A stretch of 64,000 nucleotides of DNA, from NCBI GenBank assembly GCA_900088475.1, contig FLMG01004315.1:1-64000 (forward strand). The letters run 5' to 3'. The notes under the pieces were generated by a model. That model ran no database searches, had not been told where the DNA came from, and saw only the letters and a program-made list of their open reading frames with translations. This stretch comes from Hyphochytrium catenoides. Lineage: Eukaryota > Protista > Hyphochytriomycota. Below, in pieces: positions 1 to 11,200 of this stretch. Every line of letters begins with the position of its first letter. Position 1 is the first letter of the stretch. A program made the translations under genes and the position numbers.

Positions 1-2060
1 TCGGAAAAAATTCTGCACCGCCTGACGCAAAAACCTAAACAAAAAAGCTTCGCCCTTCGGGCTCGCCAATTACATCATTATTACATTACAGATTACAGAG
101 TTTTAGTTTGTTGACTGTTATTGAGACACCGCCAGCCCATTCATTACCCTCCAAGTGTACATAGATGGAACAGCGGTATTGATCAGTGATCAGATGGTTC
201 TCAACCTTCACAAACCAATCATGATGTCGAAGAATTGATTACTGCTGGCCCTGGTCCTACGTTTGGTCCTCCTACAGATACAGCAACAATAGTTGATGTG
301 TCATGAGTATGATTTGTTAGGGAGCAGTAGTGCAACCAATGACAATGACTCTTCTCCCCCACTCACTCGATGCATGATGATAGTGCTTGTTGATGGCGTA
401 GTTGTGGTGGGGTGGCAGCAGGGTGCTTATCACTGCTGGTGGGTGGTGGGAAACTAAGCCACGGGCACAATCATCTAAAAGTTGAGAAGAGTAGTCTTAC
501 GTTTTCAGTCAAGATAGTAAAAATGAACTTCAGGTTGGCCTACAAGGTGAGAAGCCCCAACAAGAAGCCCTGCCGATTCATCTCCCCCGAGGCAGTAGAG
601 GGTATTAATGCCCGCGAGATTCTAGTAGAGCCTGCAATAGAGGAACGGCCAGCCATTGGGTTTACCTGGGTCACCATAAAAGCACGTTCCTTGTTGTCAG
701 AAGAAGTAACAAAGCATTTTGCCTACCTCCTCTTGTAAAGGAATAATGTTATATGCTAGCTAGCTACATCCTACTAAAGCCGGCCCGCGCTTCTTTCTTC
801 TTTCCCCCTTATTGTTCATTGGAAGAACAAACAGACTTGACAGGTAGTAGTAACTTATTACAGAACCGATGAGACGGACTATATGAGGCATCCACACTGT
901 AATCTTCAGCTGTTAGGATAGCTTCTTCTCCTCGGTTCCTCTAAGTAGCTTTGTCTACTATACATTTAACGCAGCACTTTTGTCTCTGTTATACTATCAT
1001 CTAACTTTCCTAGTAGGAGCATATGCTATTGCTGCGCCCAGTGCTTGGAGGATGTCTGGGACGCTCTGCAAGCGATCTTCATCACTTAAACATAGATCAA
1101 GTGCCATCATAAGAAATAATTCTCGCCTTAGAAAACCTTGTTGCTCATCACCGCATAATTATTTATGTAGAGAAAAGATCGGATTCCAGTGCACTGTTGT
1201 GGCTGCCCCAACAAGAATGCTTCTGAATGGCTACTACTGCCGTGCGAGCCGACTAACACCTGCCCAAGAAGAAGGCACCATAAGGCACCCCGACAGTTGT
1301 GATTGTCTGAGAAGTTTGAACAGGATCTCTTCGACGAGAGTTCCGTAACCTACTATAGATGTTTCTCGCTCCATTGGCTTCTGGGGCATGCTATCATCAG
1401 TATGATGATGGTTCAGGAATGGAAGCTTTCTAAAGGCTGCGTTGATCATGATGCTGTCTGGGGGTTTGATGATGATGATGGCCTCTCTTTCAACAAGGAG
1501 AGGTATGCTGGTTCTATATTACTATCTATCACCATCCCAGCACCAAGGAGTTTACACTGCTAATAAAACTTGCAATAACGTCATATGCTCTTCACTTACA
1601 GAAGAAGCTCAACCTGCCATCAAGAGGACAGTCACGGGCTGGGCACGAGGAGGAGTAGGACCGAACGACTGGAGAGCCACCAGCAATCAATAATCTCCTA
1701 CCCGAAGACCATTGTCCGACCCACATTCTTAGCTGGATGATGAAGTACCAAACGGGTAGTTCCTTGGAGTCTCATCAACTTTTTCTTCCACAGAAACAGC
1801 TTATCACAGGTAATACCTATAAGCAGGTAAGCTATCTGCCGTCAGCTCTGTCGAAGAGACCTTGTCGTTACGCCATCGTCCACTGCATCTTAATGGAGCA
1901 CCAAACAACAACGATTCCTTGGTCGCTGTTTCTTGTACATATAAAAGCCTTTGCTTTGACTGTATTATCTTAGTCCTTGATAGATTGTTATGAATAAAAG
2001 ATGCAATATTTTGTATTGCAGTTGCCCCTAAGTGACGGGCCTAGGCCGACTCGCATTTTC
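1..2060. other. Non-genic, probably decayed repeat/pseudogene DNA
   Basis: No spliceable gene found. Protein-like frames are broken by stops (e.g. + strand EDVWDALQAIFIT*T*IKCHHK near 1048; ...KAPRQL*LSEKFEQDLFDE near 1300). CpG-poor. A GC hairpin gcccTTCGggc at 52-62 sits next to a short (ATTAC)-like repeat run at 69-97. Confidence 0.35.
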
Positions 2061-3167
2061 CACTTTTCCCATAAAGAAACAACAGTGATGACTGAAGAGG
2101 GGAATCAGTGGAAACAGACACAGGGATAACTTGTACTGTCCCGCAAATTTTCTGCTGAGCGTTTCCATGACTGTTTCCGGGAACATTCACTTATGATTTA
2201 TCCACCCTCCATGAAGTATTTGAAACCTTTTGAAAGCTTCAATGGGTTTCTGAGAGAGCCAGCAGGGAGGACCTGGGAAGCCAGGAAGCAATAAAAATCG
2301 ATAGGAGGGCAGAGACAGAGTCAGAAGAAAGAGCTGATGACGTGACAGACAGAGTGGCATGAGTCAGAACCTAGCCTTCCAACAAACATATAATTCGTAG
2401 GGAAGTCCCACCTCATGAGACACTAGCCAGAGTACTGGAGAGATATTTGACACAGAGACGACAAGACAGAGCGAGATGAAGAGACGACAAGAAGTAAAAG
2501 AAGAGATTTGGGCCAAATGAGAGACCTTCTGATCTCCACCTCGCTCCAACTCTGTCTATCATTGGCTACTCTACTTTCCCAGGCTTTCGACCTCTCTGTT
2601 GCGCTCTGTCTCTTGTCTTTTCACTCTGGTGTCTCTGCCAGACCATTCTGATCGCCGCCAGCTGTTGGTCTCTTCCAGCGCAAATGGAACTCTGAGAGGG
2701 AACGACCTCTCGTCCTTATGTCGCCACAACGACAAGAAAGAGACAGAGACGCCATTGATGTGTGCAAGATGTCTAGCGCATTCTGCGCAGGGCGTCCTAG
2801 GGAACGCTGCTGACGGCAGGAGATTCGTCGACAGAGCCTCTACTGACCTAGTCGCTGTGTCGCTCTCTATTGGGGCACAATTGCTCTGGTTGTGCTGCAA
2901 GCTCCAGGAGTCCCGGTGCTTGGACACTTGCCACCTTCAAGCTTAACTTCAATTTGACGCTTAAAGCTTACACAGAGAGAGAGCAATAGAGATGCGGTCA
3001 ACTGGGTAAGCCTTCACATCCGCTTCTCAGAAAGGGAGGATATAACGACAGCTGGGACTTGGTCGTGACCTAGAGTCGTGGCTAAAACCGACCTCTACGG
3101 TTCCAGCCAGAAGAGGACTGGCGATCACCTTGTGCTTTCTATCTTTGCATCACCCGTCGTCAGGAAC

Positions 3168-6100
3168 ATGCAGCATGATAGTGACTCAGACGATGATGAA
3201 CTCATGGCGCATTTCGGCCTCGTCATGGGCTCAGAGGAGACTTGTGCCTTCTGTGCTCGGGTAGGAGCACGCGCTAGGTGTAAAGTGTGCCATGGGACAG
3301 TCTATTGCGACCAGGATTGCTTAAGGAGAGACTTTCCGAGGCACAGGCCTGCTTGTCTGTCCTTCACACAGCGTTAGTGGCGTTCTAACTTCGTTCTAAC
3401 CTCGCTATCTTGTCTGATATCGCTCCTATGCACGTTATGTCTTTAAGGTTGTTTGCTCTTTGAGTCGCGTTTAACAATGCAATTATTGACTCTGTTCTGC
3501 AGCCTGCTGCCGCCATCGTTCTCGTCTACAGCTGCTCAATATCTCCGCCTGCATCACCCATCATTTGCTCAGAGGCTGACCTCCGTCGGCTGCTTCTTCA
3601 TCCGTCTTCGAGTGGTTCTCGTTTCTTATCTTAGCCAAAGCCTGTAGAACATTTTTAAGATCTCGAGTTTTCTCCCCCTTCCTTGCTCTGTCCGTGACCC
3701 ATTCCCTTGACCGATGGTAGGCAACCGCCCTGCTGAGACAGATGAGGAGGGTGAACACTCAAGCAGCGAAGAAGAGCGACCGTCACGCTTTTCTAGAAGG
3801 GAGAGCTCGCGGGGGAGCCAAGTACTGCGGAGAGAGAGTAGTCGGCGAACGCCTTCTCCTGCCAAAGTCAGCGGTATCCCCAAAAGTGCAAGTAGCAAGA
3901 GTCTTCAGGAGTTTCGTAAGCCTCCTCCTTCCAACCCAAGCCCAAGCCACGCGCCTTCGGATCCTCGACGCCTTCCTCTGTCATTGCCCGCCTCAGTCCA
4001 AATTAAACGGGCTTCTGCATTGACTGAAGAAGAGAAACGAAGCATGCTCCAGTTAACAGAGAAGATGGAGCAGGTGCACTCTAGCTTTTGCGACGATGCC
4101 TTGTCGTCTCCTATCTCTGTGTCTCTCTTTCTCTACCTCTTTGTCTCTTTCACTGCGACCTCCTTCTTCATGATCATTCTCGGCGCTGCGCTGTCTGTAA
4201 GACCATATGTGTTTCAGCTTAGATTTTTTTGATTCATCTTTGCTGTTCACTGCCTTGGAATCAACCTTGACTTCATAGGTTCGATACGGGTTTTCATGAT
4301 CCCGCATGGCATCATCGGTCCCATTTTGCCACTCTCGCCTCCTTCGTAGTGAGTTTACAGTGCTCTTCTTTGGCTTTTTTTACTTGCTCAATGTTCCTAA
4401 TCCGGAGCATTCTCTGCGTGGTCGCGACGCTTACGTGGTTTTACTCTCTCAGGTGGAGATTTCGCAAGCACTTAAGATCAAGGAGCTAGAAAGTCAGTTA
4501 GAAGCGCTGAAACAAAGAGCGGACGCTGTGCAGAAGCAGCAGGCCGATAGAGAGAAAGAGCTGCGCGGAAGTAGCGGAAGTCTAGATAACAGGAGTAGTG
4601 TGACCAGCATTACTTCGTCCTTTTCTAGCAGTGAACAATCCTCTTCGTCAATAGTACATCCCTCAACCCCCTCCGCAGCTGATGCGGTGGGAATGAGCAG
4701 TGAGGCTTATCTAGGTGAGCTCCGAGCTCAGATCGATGAGCTCAGGAAGACGCTACAAGCAATTAGCAGTCCATCTGAGGAAGAGAAGATGGAGGTTGAA
4801 GACAGAAATAAAAGCTCAGCGGCGTGGATGGCTCAGGTAATAATGTCTCCTCAAGTACCTATCTCAGCCTTGGCTGAGAGTTTTCTTCAATCGCTCCATG
4901 TTCACCTCACTTGCCCCGCTTGTTCGCTCTGGTCCGAACTGCTTCCTCACTCACTTTGCCTTACTTTCTGCCAAAACAATCGCATCTTGAGCTAAGCAGT
5001 TGCGTATTCACCTGTCAATTGAACTTCAATCGTTTCAATCGTTTCACATGCAGTCTCTGTCCCCCTATGAGCCACTCCTGGTTAAGGACGATCCTGCTTT
5101 TGCCAAATATTTCAAGCTCAGGTAAGAGGTTCGGCAACCACGGCGGTTGAAAGTGAGAAGTAGGAGAATTGGTAGGGAATCTAGAAGGAGCTTAGAGAGC
5201 GGATAGACATTGGAAATGCCTGGCTTTGTCAGGGGGATGTGGAGGGATGGTCGTCCAGGCAGTTGTGAATACGTACGTAAACAATGCGAAGCGACGGTGG
5301 GCTTCAAGGGAAAGTCGCCTTCATACTTAAACGGCTTTGCTTCCTCGTTTACTCATTTAAAGATCACTGGGGATGACGACGGAGCAAGTGCAGGCGAAAA
5401 TGCAGATGGAAGGGGTTGATCCCGAACTGCTTAACCGCCCAGACGACAACTCTCCCAATGATAGAGGACCTCCCTCTCTTTCTGTACCTTTCTCTCTATC
5501 CGGAAACCCCTCTGCCACCGCGAGCCAAGTGGCTAGATCTGTTTCCATTGAAGATTTGGTGGCCATGGTTCTTCAGCATCAAAAATATTTTCAGAATGGA
5601 TGTAAGCTCTCATTGCTCTTCCCCACTGTCATCTACTTCAAATCGTTTTCACGGTTTGGGTCTTGCCTTTCTCGCTTCACTTATCACTCTCCCCTCTTCT
5701 GGTTGTTTTCGGTGCTTGAAAGCCTCAGCGCCGTGTGTACAATCGGGCTTGCTATTCCTTGGAGCCGTAGGGCTCATTGCGCATCCGCTAATCAAGGTTA
5801 ACATATTCCTTACACGTCTCTATATTCATGTAGTGGGTGCCTCGGAGCAAAAAGCTAGCAAAGCTACACCTCCTCTTCCACAAGTGGATATGGGGAGCGT
5901 GGCAGGCACTGCCATGGAGACTGAACAGAATAGTTTAGAGGACCAGATGGCCAGAGAGCTAGAAGAAGCAGAGCAAGCAGCAGAAGATCTATTCGGGACG
6001 GAGGTGAATGCTCCGGTGCAGCCAGGAGCGACCCTCATCCAACAGGTACGTGACTCAACTTCCGGATTGCGTCTCTTCTTATTGCTTTCTTTTGACATCA

Positions 6101-7923
6101 CCTCTCACCTTTACACCTCTTTGTTCTTGCCAACCTGACACTGCTGGGGGCTCGCGTTTGATCGACGCCAATGTATTCTGTTTGACGTTGGTGCATTCCT
6201 AGCTGGAGAAGCGGGCTCGACGGGAAGCCAACTTGGTTCTGGTCAACAATAGAGAGCAGCTGATGAAGCTCATTCATAGAATTAATAGCGAGAATATCGA
6301 GACGCAGGAGGTACATAGCTTCTGATATTCTTTCCTTCTGTAAGGGATCAACTCATATTTGCCGACTGCTCTGTCTGGTCCTTGCCTTCATGTGGCCTAT
6401 CTGAACATAATCGTCGCATCTAACGTGACTCTCATCACACCCCTCCTCTCTTCCTCTCATCCTTGCTATTGGTGTATGTACGCCTCCCCCGCTTGCGGAG
6501 TAGGAAGGCATAAAGCTCTATCAGGAGGTGTATCCGGAGGTGAGCAAAGAGAGTGATGTAACTACTGACACAGACTTTATCGCTTGTCGGCTCCTTATTC
6601 AATTTTGGTGCATTTGCTGTGCGGCATGGATGCTTGGCTTTACCTTGTGCGTCTCTATACGTGTACTGCTCTTACGCTCCCCGACTCTCAACTGGCCTTT
6701 AGCTTGAGAAGCTTGGGCTTGTGCTTGGCACAGCACCCGTTCAGACATGGTCGGCCAGGTATGGCGCCACAACTTGTCCTCCTCTTCCTATTCTGTCTTC
6801 TCTTTTCTCCGACCAGGGGGGTCGTCTGTATCCTATCTCTATCTAGACGTACTTGATGGTTGGTACTTTGTCATGGTCTAGACCGCTGGTCTCTCATTTA
6901 CGCTCATGCCTATTGATAGCTGTTTTGATCTCATGCCTTACTTGGAAGCTGTGTGACTTGGTTTTCACAGTGAATCTCTTTCTGTTTACCCTTCGTTTGT
7001 TACAACCAGGCTCCTCATAAAGAGACGTGAATCTGGAGACTGGTGGTTTTCTGAGACAGAGCGATTGGACGCAGGGAGGGCATACTGCCGTCTCTGGGCG
7101 CTGGCCTCTCTTTCCATCTTTGTGGCACAGATAGACGAGAAGAAGAGACAGATTGAGGCTGCTCCATCGGTGCTCCCCAAAGTCTGCAAGACCAAGGCAG
7201 AGGTCGTAGAGCGATACACACAACTGCTCAAGGAAATGGTAAGAACATTTGAGCCCTGTCTTGCTAGGTTGAGAGTCGGGAGAGTCTTCATCTCACTTCG
7301 CCACTGTGACGGGCTTGTAGGTGAAGCTTCGCCATAAGATCTTCCGATCAGCAGACTTTCACACCGAGCTCAAGCGTTTGCAGCAAGAGAGTATCCCGCA
7401 CCGTCTCGTTGAGTTGGAGGGAGAGCTTACTCAGGCCGCCGCCGTGCTGGGGAACTCATCTCTCGCCTTAGCGCTGGAGGACGTCAATGGCCTAAATAGA
7501 GAGAATGAGAGAGGGAAACGGCTGATGGCTCCTGCCGTTATATATCTTGGTACGAAACTCTGTAGAGAACGTCCAGATGGACGACCGGCCTTTTATCCTA
7601 TTCTAGTAGGGGCCGCCCATCTGGACTATGACGTACTCTAATTCCTGGACCAGCAAAAAGATTTTTCGTTGTTCCTCCTACTGCGATCAAGCACGTTAGC
7701 TTTCTCATCTATTCTGCTCTCTACACGCTGTTGACTGTTGGCTTCTTCGCATTTCATGTGTGCCGTAGGCGAGAAGGCTCTTCAGCTTTATCAGATTGTG
7801 CAGAAAGTTGACTCTAGAGGCCTGAAGGAGGATGAAGCAGCTTCCCTCTCTCAATCCGTACAAATGCTGAAGTCTGTCTATAAAGGGCAAACAGAGGAGG
7901 AGGACGATGCTGACGCATTATAG
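3168..7923 (+). CDS. Multi-exon protein: N-terminal MYND zinc finger, Ser/Pro-rich linker, coiled coil, CCDC53/WASHC3-type motif, C-terminal helical domain resembling CHUP1-C
   Basis: About 12 exons join in frame through GT-AG introns. MYND pattern CAFC..RCKVCHGTVYCDQDCLRRDFPRHRPAC. The spliced motif is VKDDPAFAKYFKLRSLGMTTEQVQAKMQMEGVDPELLNRPD (5081-5445). Stop TAG at 7921-7923. Confidence 0.8.
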
Positions 7924-8286
7924 CTCAAGGCACCCTTCTATCGGCCCATACAGCCTCTCTTGCCATTGCTTATCTTAGCGAATGATAGAGGCATTCCTAG
8001 AGAAGAGAGGTCTTACTAGGAGAAGAGCTCGCCACTCATAGACATTCACGGGAACAAGGAGTACTTTATAGAGCAGTGGCTGGAAGAGAGACTACGTTTG
8101 GTCCCCCAATGTACCATTAAGATGTAATATGTTGACACCACTAACTATTATCAAAGGGGGAAGCTACATTCCCGCCACCCCTAGAGCAAAGTGCATTTCT
8201 CCTCTCCGTCTTATAACCCTGTTGTCTTCCTCGCCCACATCCTTGGTCCCTCTTGCGCTGCTAGGTCCCGATTCTCGTTTCACATT

Positions 8287-11200
8287 CTACGGCGCGATGC
8301 TATCGACTACCATCTGACTGACAGCAGTATCCTCGGATCGAACGGCCATCTGGAGAATGGGAAAGAAAGAGCAAACATATGGGAGCGTAAAGATAGTCCG
8401 ATAAGCTCCGTGCCATTGGGTTATCCGTTGCACGATGTTGTCGCGTCTAACTCACCTTTAACACGGTCTGACCTCCTTCCATGGCAAGCATGACCCTAGC
8501 CAACACCTTGACGCCGCCAACATAAACTCCTGCATGGTGTGTTTAGCAGAGTGTTGCCCAACGGAGGTCAAGGAGAAGAGAACCGGTTGTCGTTACGCTC
8601 AGAAAAGAGAGAGTCACTATATATGCGACAAAGAGAAAGAAACGTTGGGGCCTGGGCAAGGAAATGGGCAAGATGCAACTGTGGTGTATGCACATCAGCA
8701 AAGAGACTAAACTTCCGAAGTAGATAGATCGGCGGTATTTGCAGGACGGAGACCAACGGCTCACCTGACAGAAGTATCATGTGCTGCTTGGCCTTGGGCT
8801 GCACAGAGGCGGTGCCTTCACAGGGTTGCATACCCAAGAAGTCAATGACCTGGATCACTCCTTCCTCCAAGGACTTGAACTGCAGTGAATATGCTTCTCT
8901 CTCTTCATGCTCGTCACCCAGCTGCGGGGACAGCACTTTAGTCATGACAGCAGCTACTTGAAGTCAAGAGCTTGAGAGAGGTACATGCAGAGTAAAGAAC
9001 ACTGAAGATAGAGGTTGACCCCATGGCGGTATGACAAAAAGAGGGCTCAAACTGTGGCTAAGACAGAAAAGTAGATGGGATAGGTACCTCCTAGATAGAG
9101 AAGAAATAGTCACAGTCAATGAGAGGCACCGGGCCTATGCCAACGGGAGCCGGGTCGGCCGAGGAAGCCTAAGAAGCACTCAATCACCTGTTCCCAAGCA
9201 GATCGAAAGTCTTGAACTTGGACCTTAGCCATGAAGTCCGCAGCTGCAAGCTCAAGCTCTTCGAGCGGATACTGCTCATCATATCCTTCACCTTCCGCCT
9301 CCCCAGTTGCTGGGTCACAGTCATAGAGTTGGAATTGTAGCTGCGAGACATGAAGGTAAGCGAGGGACAGCGTGGGATCAAACGACTCGCCGTCCTAGTT
9401 CTGTTCACCCCCACTGGATAACGGAATCATGCCTCGGCAGGTGTGCGTGCCTAAGCCTAACATTCATGTTGCTGAAGACCTTAAGCCATCCCTTCTATGA
9501 GCCATCTTTGACCTCCATTGCTGTTTCGCTCCTGTTACGCTTCCTCCCTCTCTGCCTCTGTGTACGCCACTTCTGTCTGTTGTCCTTTGCCGTGGCCGCT
9601 CTTGTGCTTTAGACAACCCGCCGTACCTCGTTGGCTAAGTTGGTGACGCCTAGACCAGCTCCTGCTACGTTCTTTAGACAGACATATGCCCTTCCAGGTT
9701 TGCCATAGGGCACTCGCTCACAAGGGATGACAGGACCCATTTCCCACGCTCCTTGCTCAGCCGGGGTAACCTTGACGGTCACATTACCTAGCAGCTGGTC
9801 GTTCACCGTGTTGTTGATGTTATACTGGAGAGAGAGGATCAACAGAAGGAACCAATGAGACCCCAACAATGGTTCCACGCAGAGCCAAGAACGAGTACAG
9901 GGTTCATAGGCCATGGAGGAAAAGGAAAAAGTAGTGAGAATAGCGAGACTCTGATGGTGGAGTTCAACCCAACGTTTGAAGATTCTGATCCCAGCACTGC
10001 TAGTCACGCGCGTTTCCTCGCTTCTCATATTGTTCCTTGTTACTCGCGAACAATAGTCGAGCAACCTGCGCTCACTTTTTGATATCGTCGCACCAAATAT
10101 CTCTCGGCCTCGTCGTCCAGCAGATCTCTATTATCTGACTCTCTCTCGCCCATTTATGTTTCAAAAACCACTCAGTCCGTACCTGTAGGACAACATGCTG
10201 GGGGAAAATGTGCTTGGTGACCGTAACGAAGTATTCTGCCTCTTGTTCAGTCAGCTCAACAGGCCGAGAACTGCGGAATAACTGGCCCAAGTTGGCAAAT
10301 TGTGGGAGCTGGACCACAGCAGTAGGAGGGCGGACGGGGCGTGGTGACAAGGCTCAGCAATGCACGTGAATAGGAAAAGGTAAGAGAGAAAGTAGAAGAA
10401 TATATGTCTCGCACTTGCTAGATATGTGAGACAAGAGGTAGACGAAGAGTGATAGAGATTGAGAACTGGAGTTTACGCGGAAACGACCTACGAAGTTCAC
10501 CACATATATGCACAAGGGGTACTAGTCCAGAACGGAGAGAGAGGGGACAAAACGATACAAGCACAACTCGACCTTATAGAGCTCTTGTGCCGCTGAGACT
10601 TCTTCACTCTTTGTCTCCTGACCTGGAAGAACAGGCGAAGCAGCAGCCGGCGCATTGACTCCTGTGTAGGGAGATGAAAGAGTTAACCTTTAGAGGGGGT
10701 GGCAAAAGACCTGTCCACGAGCGGCATACAGTTCACATGAGAATAACAACAACCAACATGCTAGAGGCGTAGCCACGAGGGATGATATGGGGAAGAAAGT
10801 TAGAAATGGAAGAAAGTTAGAAATGCGGGTCCAACCGCGCTACCTCTTTTAACAGGTTCAGGTGCTCTTTCTTCTACAACTGGCAGTGCCGCGAAAGTGA
10901 CTGGACCTTCACTTGGCCTTAGCATGTACGTCTCCAAGGAGCGATTAAGAGCGTCCGCTGACATCGGAAGAGCTGAACCCAGAATTGAAGCACTTAGCGA
11001 AAGGGTAGTAACCACGGTGCAAGAACAGAAAGGAAACATTCAGGAATATCAAGAAGAAAGTGAAAGAAACAGACTCAACCCATTGACTAGGGCAAGTCAG
11101 GAAGACTAACAGAGCTCCTCGACCGGCATCTCTCTCTCGGATCCCCAGCCCAGACCCCGCACGATAGAAGAGCAAGCCAACGTGCGTGATCTCTTGTTAG

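What the first reader, a model, noticed from the sequence alone, without database searches (positions are those of the whole stretch)
3168..7923. Candidate novel actin regulator: MYND finger + WASH/CCDC53 motif + CHUP1-like C-terminal domain in a non-plant eukaryote
Seen: a cleanly spliceable gene, invisible in the ORF track, with the order MYND - low-complexity Pro/Ser - coiled coil - KDDPAFAKYFKL..G...EQVQAKMQMEGVDPELL - helical C-terminal domain. Known: that middle motif is the conserved C-terminal signature of WASH subunit CCDC53, and CHUP1-C is the plant actin-nucleating domain used in chloroplast movement. Inference: the C-terminal domain (~6030-7880) keeps CHUP1-C spacing in three blocks (CHUP1 from memory). 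(1) TLIQQLEKRA..QLMKLIHRINSENIETQEEGIKLYQEVYPELEKL vs NMIGEIENRS..FVQSLATEVRASSFTDIEDLLAFVSWLDEELSFL. (2) RLQQESIP..ELTQAAAVLGNSSLALALED vs RYKEFGIP..KIKLSSVQLAKKYMKRVAYE. (3) VIYLGEKALQLYQIVQK vs FLLLQGVRFAFRVHQ. Identity is low, but two independent actin-linked modules in one protein would point to an undescribed stramenopile actin-nucleation or organelle-positioning system.
Basis: partly seen in the sequence, partly recalled or inferred. Interest (0 to 1): 0.8.

Follow-up and report, generated by a model that had tools for sequence, protein, structure and literature searches.

The report
CHUP1-type domain in a stramenopile
This protist gene, which water moulds also carry, ends in a domain predicted to fold like the plant CHUP1 actin-building domain, so that "plant-specific" module is probably much more widespread, though its activity here is untested.

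Summary
Window 3168-7923 (+) is one 12-exon gene of 757 codons with GT-AG introns, consistent phases and a length divisible by three.

- **One gene:** every exon lines up, in order, with full-length single-chain proteins from more than 30 oomycetes.
- **MYND finger:** Pfam gives E 7.9e-8, and all eight zinc ligands are present.
- **WASHC3/CCDC53-type unit:** there is one copy, split by intron 4. Oomycete relatives carry three (Pfam 2.1e-25). It models as a small folded three-helix domain, not a linear motif.
- **C-terminal domain:** the Pythium orthologue's domain modelled at pLDDT 90.5. Arabidopsis CHUP1-C is its only strong match among solved structures (Z 15.3-15.8, 213-221 residues; next best 10.8 over part of the domain). 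In the ESM Atlas the best match is the CHUP1 cluster (TM 0.66/0.69; next 0.37).
- **Sequence similarity to CHUP1:** none.

The actin role rests on analogy with CHUP1 and was not tested. The gene is not a WASHC3 orthologue.

This scan already reported the same idea on another piece of this genome (s1-371117). The CHUP1 authors reported C-terminal-only relatives in green algae and a cryptophyte. I found no paper describing this stramenopile/oomycete family.

The parts
3168..3372 (+). Exon 1: start codon, acidic N-terminus (MQHDSDSDDDELM) and the MYND zinc finger (C-x2-C-x8-C-x2-C-x5-C-x3-C-x7-H-x3-C).
   Evidence: Pfam zf-MYND E 7.9e-8, 32.7 bits against a cut-off of 22.7. 44-48% identical to the N-termini of oomycete orthologues.
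3721..4073 (+). Exon 2: Ser/Arg/Glu/Pro-rich, probably disordered linker with no polyproline run.
   Evidence: Translation. No Pfam family. Weak match in the right order to P0003 74-110.
4453..4836 (+). Exon 3: coiled-coil-like helical region with a Ser-rich insert.
   Evidence: Only weak hits, to many coiled-coil families (E 0.005-0.1). Lies where the P0003 coiled coil lies, about 140-245.
5054..5121 (+). Exon 4: first half of the single CCDC53/WASHC3-type unit (YEPLLVKDDPAFAKYFKL).
   Evidence: 83-89% identical to the units of oomycete proteins. Fits the unit alignment A3.
5363..5601 (+). Exon 5: second half of the unit (SLGMTTEQVQAKMQMEGVDPELLNRPDDNSPNDRGPP), a Pro/Ser linker and a conserved helix (SIEDLVAMVLQHQKYFQ).
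   Evidence: Pfam CCDC53 PF10152 E 0.0023, 18.8 bits, profile positions 125-147 of 147. 42-49% identical over 76 aa to orthologues. Unit model pLDDT 94.9.
5834..6045 (+). Exon 6: linker, an acidic helix (EDQMARELEEAEQAAEDLFG) and the first residues of the C-terminal domain (TLIQQ).
   Evidence: 44-53% identical over 38-52 aa to P0020, P0018 and P0037 just before their C-terminal domains.
6203..6758 (+). Exons 7-9 (6203-6310, 6504-6539, 6703-6758): the first three helices of the CHUP1-C-like domain.
   Evidence: E7 is 44% and E9 67-78% identical to orthologues with no indels. E8 aligns in A1. They correspond to model helices H12-30, H32-44 and H50-66.
7010..7238 (+). Exon 10: the most conserved core of the domain (R-LLIKRRESGDWWFSETERLDAGRAYCRLW...) and its long central helix.
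Evidence: 48-53% identical over 75 aa, E about 1e-22. The junction with E9 is fixed by the conserved 'TWSARLLIK'.
7321..7549 (+). Exon 11: helices 6-8 of the CHUP1-C-like domain.
   Evidence: 35-39% identical over 76 aa to orthologues. This was the piece used in the full-library search that found P0003.
7769..7923 (+). Exon 12: last helices of the domain, the conserved acidic tail (EEEDDADAL) and the stop codon.
   Evidence: 31-43% identical to orthologue C-termini. The family ends in EEEDDVL.

Best explanation
The locus is one 12-exon gene for a 757-residue cytoskeletal protein. It belongs to a family conserved in oomycetes and their relatives.

Domain order: MYND zinc finger, disordered Ser/Arg linker, coiled coil, one WASHC3/CCDC53-type three-helix unit with a short Pro-rich tail (oomycetes have three), a linker with two conserved helices, a roughly 270-residue all-helical domain with the fold of the plant CHUP1/IPGA1 C-terminal domain, and an acidic tail.

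**Shown here:** the gene model, the domain identities and the fold match.

**Inferred:** the protein works like CHUP1.
- The MYND finger takes the place of CHUP1's membrane anchor and docks the protein on a partner.
- The coiled coil and the C-terminal domain dimerise.
- The C-terminal domain binds filament ends and promotes actin assembly.
- The CCDC53-type unit sits where CHUP1 and formins carry their proline-rich FH1 region and brings in actin monomers or a cofactor.

Oomycetes have no plastids, so the job cannot be chloroplast positioning. A local actin-assembly or organelle/cortex-anchoring role is more likely.
For: - **Gene model:** GT-AG introns, consistent phases, total length divisible by three. 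The exons follow the order of full-length orthologues.
- **Conserved family:** 38 proteins from Pythium, Phytophthora, Albugo, Aphanomyces, Saprolegnia and Lagenidium share the C-terminal domain, E 1e-40 to 1e-164. Most carry PF01753 plus PF10152.
- **MYND:**
- **Unit:** Pfam 2.1e-25 with three stretches in P0003. The window copy fits the alignment. The unit is confidently folded, pLDDT 94.9.
- **C-terminal domain model:** pLDDT 90.5, pTM 0.81.
- **Foldseek against PDB:** the top three hits are CHUP1-C (8wag, 8waf) at probability 1.0 and TM 0.53/0.63. The fourth hit has TM 0.21.
- **VIA-align:** Z 15.8, 221 of 226 residues, rmsd 4.4 Å; next best Z 10.8, partial. An exhaustive search of 48,161 chains again puts CHUP1 alone on top, Z 15.3 against 10.7.
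- **ESM Atlas:** the CHUP1 / PF26700 cluster has TM 0.66/0.69; the next has 0.37.
- **CHUP1-C biochemistry:** it polymerises profilin-actin and needs its proline-rich region (bioRxiv 10.1101/2020.01.14.905984).
Against: - No sequence-level link to CHUP1. The family HMM against PDB finds nothing, and it scores verified CHUP1 fragments like shuffles.
- All-helical folds can give high Z by chance; the tool notes a typical best Z of about 14 for helical models.
- The equivalents of CHUP1 R820 and F958 could not be mapped.
- IPGA1, in the same plant domain family, is a microtubule-associated protein.
- The window protein has no polyproline tract.
- No solved structure resembles the CCDC53 unit, best Z 3.6, so its ligand is unknown.
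- No RNA evidence.
Confidence: 0.55

Rival explanations
1. The domain is a true CHUP1/IPGA1-type domain but does not nucleate actin here. The protein is a microtubule-associated or general scaffold protein, as reported for Arabidopsis IPGA1.
For: IPGA1 shares the CHUP1 C-terminal region and binds microtubules directly (PMC6793458). The Atlas cluster that matches carries Pfam IPGAL1_C. The window protein has no polyproline tract.
Against: The only member of the domain family with both a solved structure and biochemistry (CHUP1-C) acts on actin. The paper passages I read do not say which part of IPGA1 binds microtubules. The unit placed before the domain is otherwise known from an actin-regulating complex.
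Confidence: 0.2
2. The fold likeness is convergence between elongated helical bundles. The C-terminal domain is a lineage-specific domain unrelated to CHUP1.
For: No sequence signal. The aligner's own note says helical models can reach Z of about 14 without known kinship.
Against: The match covers 213-221 of about 230 residues in the same helix order. It stands about 5 Z units above every other chain in two searches, and the Atlas shape search also puts CHUP1 first. The best local HMM placement, though not significant, has the same offset (749) as the structural alignment.
Confidence: 0.12
3. The gene is this lineage's WASHC3/CCDC53 subunit of the WASH complex, as some database names say.
For: Automatic names such as 'WASH complex subunit CCDC53' or 'subunit 3' are given to several orthologues. 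PF10152 matches.
Against: Only profile positions 98-147 of 147 match. The N-terminal region of the PF10152 profile is not matched, and the coiled-coil exon gives no CCDC53 hit at E up to 1. The unit is repeated three times in oomycetes. The protein is 750-850 aa and has two extra domains. Unit-only clusters are commonest in diatoms (a lead only), which are reported to lack Arp2/3 and WASP-family proteins (PMC3298513).
Confidence: 0.05
4. The MYND exon and the downstream exons belong to two genes, and the 12-exon model is an artefact.
For: There is no RNA evidence. Intron 1 is 348 nt.
Against: More than 20 orthologues carry MYND and the C-terminal domain in one chain. E1 and E2 follow P0003 2-71 and 74-110 in order. 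A metagenome relative also has the MYND start directly upstream.
Confidence: 0.03

Closest known systems
Arabidopsis CHUP1 C-terminal domain (PDB 8waf, 8wag; Pfam PF26700 IPGAL1_C, InterPro IPR040265)
   Same: Same all-helical fold over nearly the whole domain (Z 15.3-15.8, TM 0.63-0.69). Same position at the C-terminus, after a coiled coil and a linker. The overall layout is parallel: targeting module, coiled coil, recruiting region, then the domain.
   Different: 13-16% identity and no detectable sequence or profile similarity. The N-terminus is a MYND finger, not a chloroplast-envelope anchor. A CCDC53-type unit replaces the polyproline region. The hosts are plastid-less heterotrophs, at least for the oomycete members. 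Activity is untested.
CHUC proteins (CHUP1 C-half only) of Coccomyxa, Micromonas and Guillardia theta (bioRxiv 10.1101/2020.01.14.905984)
   Same: They show that the domain exists outside streptophytes and without CHUP1's N-terminal half.
   Different: They were found by sequence similarity in photosynthetic algae. The family here is not detectable by sequence, has a different architecture and occurs in oomycete-type stramenopiles. I could not compare them directly because no CHUC sequence was available by reference.
WASHC3 / CCDC53 (Pfam PF10152)
   Same: The 50-60-residue unit (KDDP.F.KYFKL ... EQ...KM...G.DP.LL..PD..SPND) matches the C-terminal third of the profile.
   Different: There is no match to the N-terminal two thirds of the profile. 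The unit is repeated in oomycetes, and the protein is four times longer with other domains.
Formins (FH1-FH2)
   Same: Same logic of a recruiting region placed before a dimeric helical actin-assembly domain. An earlier scan note (s1-367386, not tested here) reports a formin in this genome with six CCDC53-type units in place of FH1.
   Different: FH2 structures match the model only at TM 0.15-0.18 and are absent from the top 50 in the VIA-align searches. There is no Pfam FH2 hit.
Arabidopsis IPGA1 (PMC6793458)
   Same: Its C-terminal region belongs to the same plant family as CHUP1-C.
   Different: It is described as a microtubule-associated protein of land plants and has neither a MYND finger nor a CCDC53 unit.

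Membership tests
zf-MYND (PF01753) | Profile match above Pfam's gathering score | tested here: met
   32.7 bits against a cut-off of 22.7, E 7.9e-8, profile positions 1-39 of 39.
zf-MYND (PF01753) | Eight zinc ligands in the C4-C2HC pattern | tested here: met
   C26, C29, C38, C41, C47, C51, H59 and C63 of the exon 1 translation.
CCDC53 / WASHC3 C-terminal unit (PF10152, profile 98-147) | Sequence match to the C-terminal conserved unit | tested here: met
   The window's E5 half scores 18.8 bits, E 0.0023, below the 24.6 cut-off because intron 4 splits the unit. The E4 half is 83-89% identical to orthologue units. P0003 scores 90.3 bits, E 2.1e-25, in three stretches. The window copy fits alignment A3.
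WASHC3 orthologue (WASH complex subunit) | The N-terminal part of the PF10152 profile (positions 1-97), which in WASHC3 is the part that assembles into the complex (that role is from my own knowledge) | tested here: not met
   No match to profile positions 1-97 in the window exons or in P0003. The coiled-coil exon E3 gives no CCDC53 hit at E up to 1.
WASHC3 orthologue (WASH complex subunit) | Short single-unit protein (about 190 aa, from my own knowledge) that co-purifies with the WASH complex | tested here: not met
   The window protein is 757 aa with MYND and CHUP1-like domains, and oomycete members have three units. Co-purification cannot be tested here.
CHUP1/IPGA1 C-terminal domain (PF26700, IPR040265) | Same three-dimensional fold as CHUP1 756-982 | tested here: met
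   Tested on the orthologue model, which the window exons match at 36-67% identity without indels. Foldseek top three hits, TM 0.53/0.63. VIA-align Z 15.8 over 221 of 226 residues. Z 15.3 in the exhaustive search. Atlas TM 0.66/0.69.
CHUP1/IPGA1 C-terminal domain (PF26700, IPR040265) | Sequence or profile match to the family | tested here: inconclusive
   The A2 HMM does not find CHUP1 in the PDB and scores CHUP1 fragments like shuffles. The local Pfam copy does not recognise even an exact 34-residue CHUP1 fragment, so PF26700 is probably not in it. No profile-profile test was possible.
CHUP1/IPGA1 C-terminal domain (PF26700, IPR040265) | Functional residues: R820 (actin contact) and F958 (dimer contact) of CHUP1 | not testable with these tools
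   The fold searches return ranges only, not residue pairs. I confirmed where R820 and F958 lie in the 8waf sequence. Any equivalence (for example the invariant R of 'WSARLLIK', or the conserved Leu of 'EKAxQL') is a guess.
CHUP1/IPGA1 C-terminal domain (PF26700, IPR040265) | Promotes polymerisation of profilin-actin in vitro | not testable with these tools
   Needs biochemistry.
CHUP1 proper | N-terminal hydrophobic chloroplast-envelope anchor and a polyproline (FH1-like) region | tested here: not met
   The N-terminus is acidic and followed by MYND. The longest proline run in the window exons is PPP.
Formin FH2 | FH2 fold or Pfam FH2 match | tested here: not met
   FH2 chains 3obv_E and 1ux5 match only at TM 0.15-0.18, E 0.7-0.8, and none is in the VIA-align top 50. 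No Pfam FH2 hit.

The most novel reading that the evidence does not exclude
The CHUP1-C class of actin-assembly domain is not plant-specific. It is an old eukaryotic module that has diverged beyond sequence recognition. In stramenopiles it is fed by WASHC3/CCDC53-type three-helix domains rather than by polyproline. That small domain would then be a so far unrecognised actin- or profilin-delivery (or cofactor-docking) module shared by the WASH complex, some formins and CHUP1-like proteins.
Probability: 0.3. Interest if true: 0.8.

Novelty: new variant of a known kind. Interest (0 to 1): 0.6.

Why it matters
[quoted passage not shown] A relative with the same fold, in a different architecture, in heterotrophic stramenopiles would change that picture.

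- The domain's history would move well beyond plants.
- It could no longer be tied to chloroplast movement.
- Oomycetes include major crop and animal pathogens, and this would give them an unstudied candidate actin-assembly factor.
- The conserved C-terminal unit of WASHC3, whose function I know of no study on, would have a testable role, because here it sits where formins and CHUP1 carry their profilin-binding region.

All of this can be tested directly with recombinant fragments.

Tried and rejected
- **RNA evidence:** no run was listed.
- **PDB sequence searches** with exons E5, E10 and E11 found nothing useful.
- **Full-library search** with E11 gave three hits. Two (P0001, P0002) are repeat proteins and were discarded as spurious.
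- **Word search with one unit** returned only the same family, so it said nothing about other architectures.
- **Word search with the domain profile** returned only oomycete fragments, with no bridge to CHUP1.
- **ESM Atlas feature search** of the domain gave no usable hit.
- **Metagenome scan** with the domain alignment: the first attempt failed because the alignment had partial rows. The second found no relative.
- **Fold searches of the CCDC53 unit** gave only generic three-helix matches, E above 1 and Z at most 3.6.
- **Formin FH2 kinship** was rejected.
- **WASHC3 orthology** was rejected.
- **Literature:** no paper links CHUP1 to oomycetes or stramenopiles, or formins to CCDC53 in oomycetes. 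The published Plant Cell version of the CHUP1 paper is not held, so I used the preprint.
Full report
**Observation**

I read window 2800-8300 and translated it in three frames. A 12-exon model on the + strand runs from the ATG at 3168 to the TAG at 7921-7923.

- Exons: E1 3168-3372, E2 3721-4073, E3 4453-4836, E4 5054-5121, E5 5363-5601, E6 5834-6045, E7 6203-6310, E8 6504-6539, E9 6703-6758, E10 7010-7238, E11 7321-7549, E12 7769-7923.
- All 11 introns (82-379 nt) start with GT and end with AG.
- The five split codons are consistent, and the exons sum to 2274 nt (757 codons plus stop).
- No RNA run could be listed for the locus, so there is no transcript evidence.
- Every search used single exons by reference or database proteins by id.

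**Family scans of the exons**

- E1 holds a MYND finger (PF01753, E 7.9e-8, 32.7 bits, above the cut-off) with all eight zinc ligands.
- E5 matches the last 23 positions of the CCDC53/WASHC3 profile (PF10152, E 0.0023, 18.8 bits). This is below the cut-off because intron 4 cuts the unit in two.
- E3 gives only weak hits, spread over many coiled-coil families.
- E6 to E12 match no family at a meaningful level (best E above 0.04).
- PDB sequence searches with E5, E10 and E11 found nothing useful.

**Relatives**

A search of the 1.84-billion-protein library with E11 gave three weak hits. Two are repeat proteins and spurious.

The third, P0003 (Pythium insidiosum, 789 aa), has the same order of parts. 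It starts with the N-terminus MSDSDSDDELM and a MYND finger (2.5e-7). An acidic/Ser-rich linker and a coiled coil follow. Then come three CCDC53-type units (PF10152, 2.1e-25, three stretches, profile 98-147) and the same C-terminal domain.

A word search with P0003 residues 520-789 found 38 proteins, E 1e-40 to 1e-164.
- They come from Pythium, Globisporangium, Lagenidium, Phytophthora, Plasmopara, Peronospora, Albugo, Aphanomyces, Saprolegnia and Achlya, plus some environmental assemblies.
- Most are named 'MYND-type domain-containing protein' or 'hypothetical'.
- A few are auto-named WASH complex subunit CCDC53 or subunit 3.

Exon-by-exon BLASTP places the window's exons on these proteins in order and without indels.
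- E10 is 53% identical (E about 1e-22), E5 42-49%, E1 44-48%, E11 38-39%, E12 31-43%.
- One-residue gaps fall exactly at the split codons.
- This validates the model, including the E9/E10 junction ('TWSA|R|LLIK').
- It also shows that MYND and the C-terminal domain belong to one polypeptide.
- An environmental relative (P0037) also has the MYND start just upstream of its called ORF.

The window protein is the most divergent member seen and is intron-rich. The organism is therefore a relative of oomycetes, not one of the sequenced oomycetes found here.

**The C-terminal domain**

I aligned residues 505-789 of P0003 with 23 orthologues and with the window's exons as separate rows. AlphaFold2 gave a confident all-helical model: pLDDT 90.5, pTM 0.81, ten main helices.

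| Search | Best match | Next best |
|---|---|---|
| Foldseek, 350,542 PDB chains | Arabidopsis CHUP1 C-terminal fragments 8wag_A, 8waf, 8wag_B at ranks 1-3: probability 1.0, E 1.9e-3 to 8.8e-3, TM 0.53 by query and 0.63 by target, about 256 columns | Rank 4, TM 0.21 |
| VIA-align on Foldseek's list | 8waf: Z 15.8, rmsd 4.4 Å, 221 of 226 residues, model 8-265 on CHUP1 757-982. 8wag_B: Z 15.5, rmsd 3.2 Å, 214 residues | Z 10.8 over 154 residues |
| VIA-align, exhaustive, 48,161 representative chains | 8wag_A: Z 15.3 | Z 10.7 at rmsd 8.9 Å |
| ESM Atlas shape search | Cluster 'Protein CHUP1, chloroplastic' (Pfam PF26700 IPGAL1_C, Streptophyta): TM 0.66/0.69, 232 residues, rmsd 3.5 Å | TM 0.37 |

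Formin FH2 chains appear only at TM 0.15-0.18.

The fold was shown for the orthologue. The window's domain aligns to it at 36-67% identity with essentially no indels, so the same fold is a safe inference.

**Sequence level**

Nothing links the family to CHUP1 by sequence.
- The family HMM finds no CHUP1 chain in the PDB at E up to 10.
- No member hits a relevant Pfam model. However, the local Pfam copy does not recognise even an exact 34-residue CHUP1 fragment. PF26700 is therefore probably missing from it, and that blank means little.
They are exact, at residues 783-816 and 914-933.
- I also confirmed two short fragments typed from my own memory, 817-846 (with R820) and 946-968 (with F958).
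- The family HMM scores these fragments negatively. Pairwise local alignments score no better than shuffles, z 0.9, -0.7 and -1.3.
It is not significant.

**The CCDC53-type unit**

Twenty-two units from eleven orthologues, plus the two window halves, align at 67% mean column identity. The consensus is Y.PLLVKDDP.FKKYFKL..M.MP.EQIK.KME.DGVDP.LLD.PD.VSPNDPGPP, and the window copy fits it throughout.

AlphaFold2 models the 59-residue unit at pLDDT 94.9. It has three helices, and its N- and C-terminal segments pair. It is therefore a small folded domain that includes the 'SPNDPGPP' tail, not a linear motif.

No solved structure resembles it beyond generic three-helix matches: Foldseek E above 1, VIA-align Z at most 3.6.

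Only the C-terminal third of the WASHC3 profile is matched. The unit is repeated in oomycetes, and the protein is four times the size of WASHC3. So this is not a WASHC3 orthologue, whatever some database names say.

Atlas feature neighbours of the unit are CCDC53-domain clusters commonest in diatoms (a lead only). Diatoms are reported to lack Arp2/3 and WASP-family proteins (PMC3298513). That would make the unit independent of the WASH complex.

**What is known**

- The CHUP1 preprint (10.1101/2020.01.14.905984) shows that CHUP1 756-982 is an elongated helical domain whose central three-helix bundle resembles FH2.
- CHUP1-C dimerises, polymerises profilin-actin and needs its polyproline region.
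- R820 and F958 are essential.
- The authors call it plant-specific. They also report C-half-only relatives (CHUC) in Coccomyxa, Micromonas and the cryptophyte Guillardia theta.
- IPGA1, with the same C-terminal region, is a microtubule-associated protein (PMC6793458).
- I found no paper linking CHUP1 to oomycetes or stramenopiles, or formins to CCDC53 in oomycetes.

**Earlier notes of this scan**

- s1-371117 reported the same idea on another piece of this genome. Its follow-up concluded that the fold is the same and that relatives occur in water moulds and haptophytes. My tests agree on the fold and on water moulds. I did not test haptophytes.
- s1-367386 reported a formin in this genome with six CCDC53-type units in place of FH1. 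I could not test that. If it is true, it strengthens the idea that the unit stands in for FH1.

**Mechanism**

Shown: one gene; the MYND finger; the coiled-coil-like region; the folded CCDC53-type unit; the CHUP1-C fold; the conserved acidic tail.

Inferred, by analogy with CHUP1 and formins:
- MYND docks the protein on a partner.
- The coiled coil and the C-terminal domain dimerise.
- The C-terminal domain acts on actin filament ends.
- The unit recruits monomers or a cofactor.

Oomycetes have no plastids, so chloroplast positioning is excluded for them.

Rivals:
- an IPGA1-like microtubule or scaffold role (0.2);
- fold convergence (0.12);
- a WASHC3 orthologue (0.05);
- two separate genes (0.03).

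**Verdict**

The function is untested. I rate it a new variant of a known kind, with interest 0.6.

Noticed in passing
window 7890-7923; family C-termini in alignment A1: Every family member ends in a conserved acidic tail with a hydrophobic end: EEEDDVL in oomycetes, EDDADAL in the window. It has no tryptophan, so it is unlike the acidic Arp2/3-binding tail of WASP-family proteins. Its role is unknown.
   Followed up: no
window 5500-5600 and 5930-6000; P0003 470-504: Two short conserved helices lie between the CCDC53 unit and the CHUP1-like domain (SIEDLVAMVLQHQKYFQ and EDQMARELEEAEQAAEDLFG). They lie where CHUP1 716-755 carries the extra helix that contacts a second molecule in the crystal. 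Neither model included them.
   Followed up: no
L001:1463-1699: The environmental relative P0037 was called without its MYND finger. A 78-aa 'gene' just upstream begins MASDSDDDELI..C.FC..., then leaves the frame inside the finger, so an intron splits MYND there and the public gene call is truncated.
   Followed up: partly
P0006 (Globisporangium splendens, 1055 aa): This family member is named 'Peptidyl-tRNA hydrolase 2, partial' and is about 270 aa longer than the others. It is probably a fused gene model.
   Followed up: no
window 5122-5362 (intron 4): The single CCDC53-type unit is split by a phase-2 intron between its first and second helices. That is why Pfam sees only half of it in the window.
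   Followed up: yes
Pfam library used by the tools: An exact 34-residue CHUP1 fragment matches no local Pfam model, while the ESM Atlas cites PF26700 IPGAL1_C (Pfam 38.1) for CHUP1. The local copy probably lacks that family, so a blank for this domain is not informative.
   Followed up: partly
window 1-3100: The 3 kb upstream of the gene has lower G+C (0.45 in the first 2 kb) and only short ORFs. I saw no obvious gene there.
   Followed up: no
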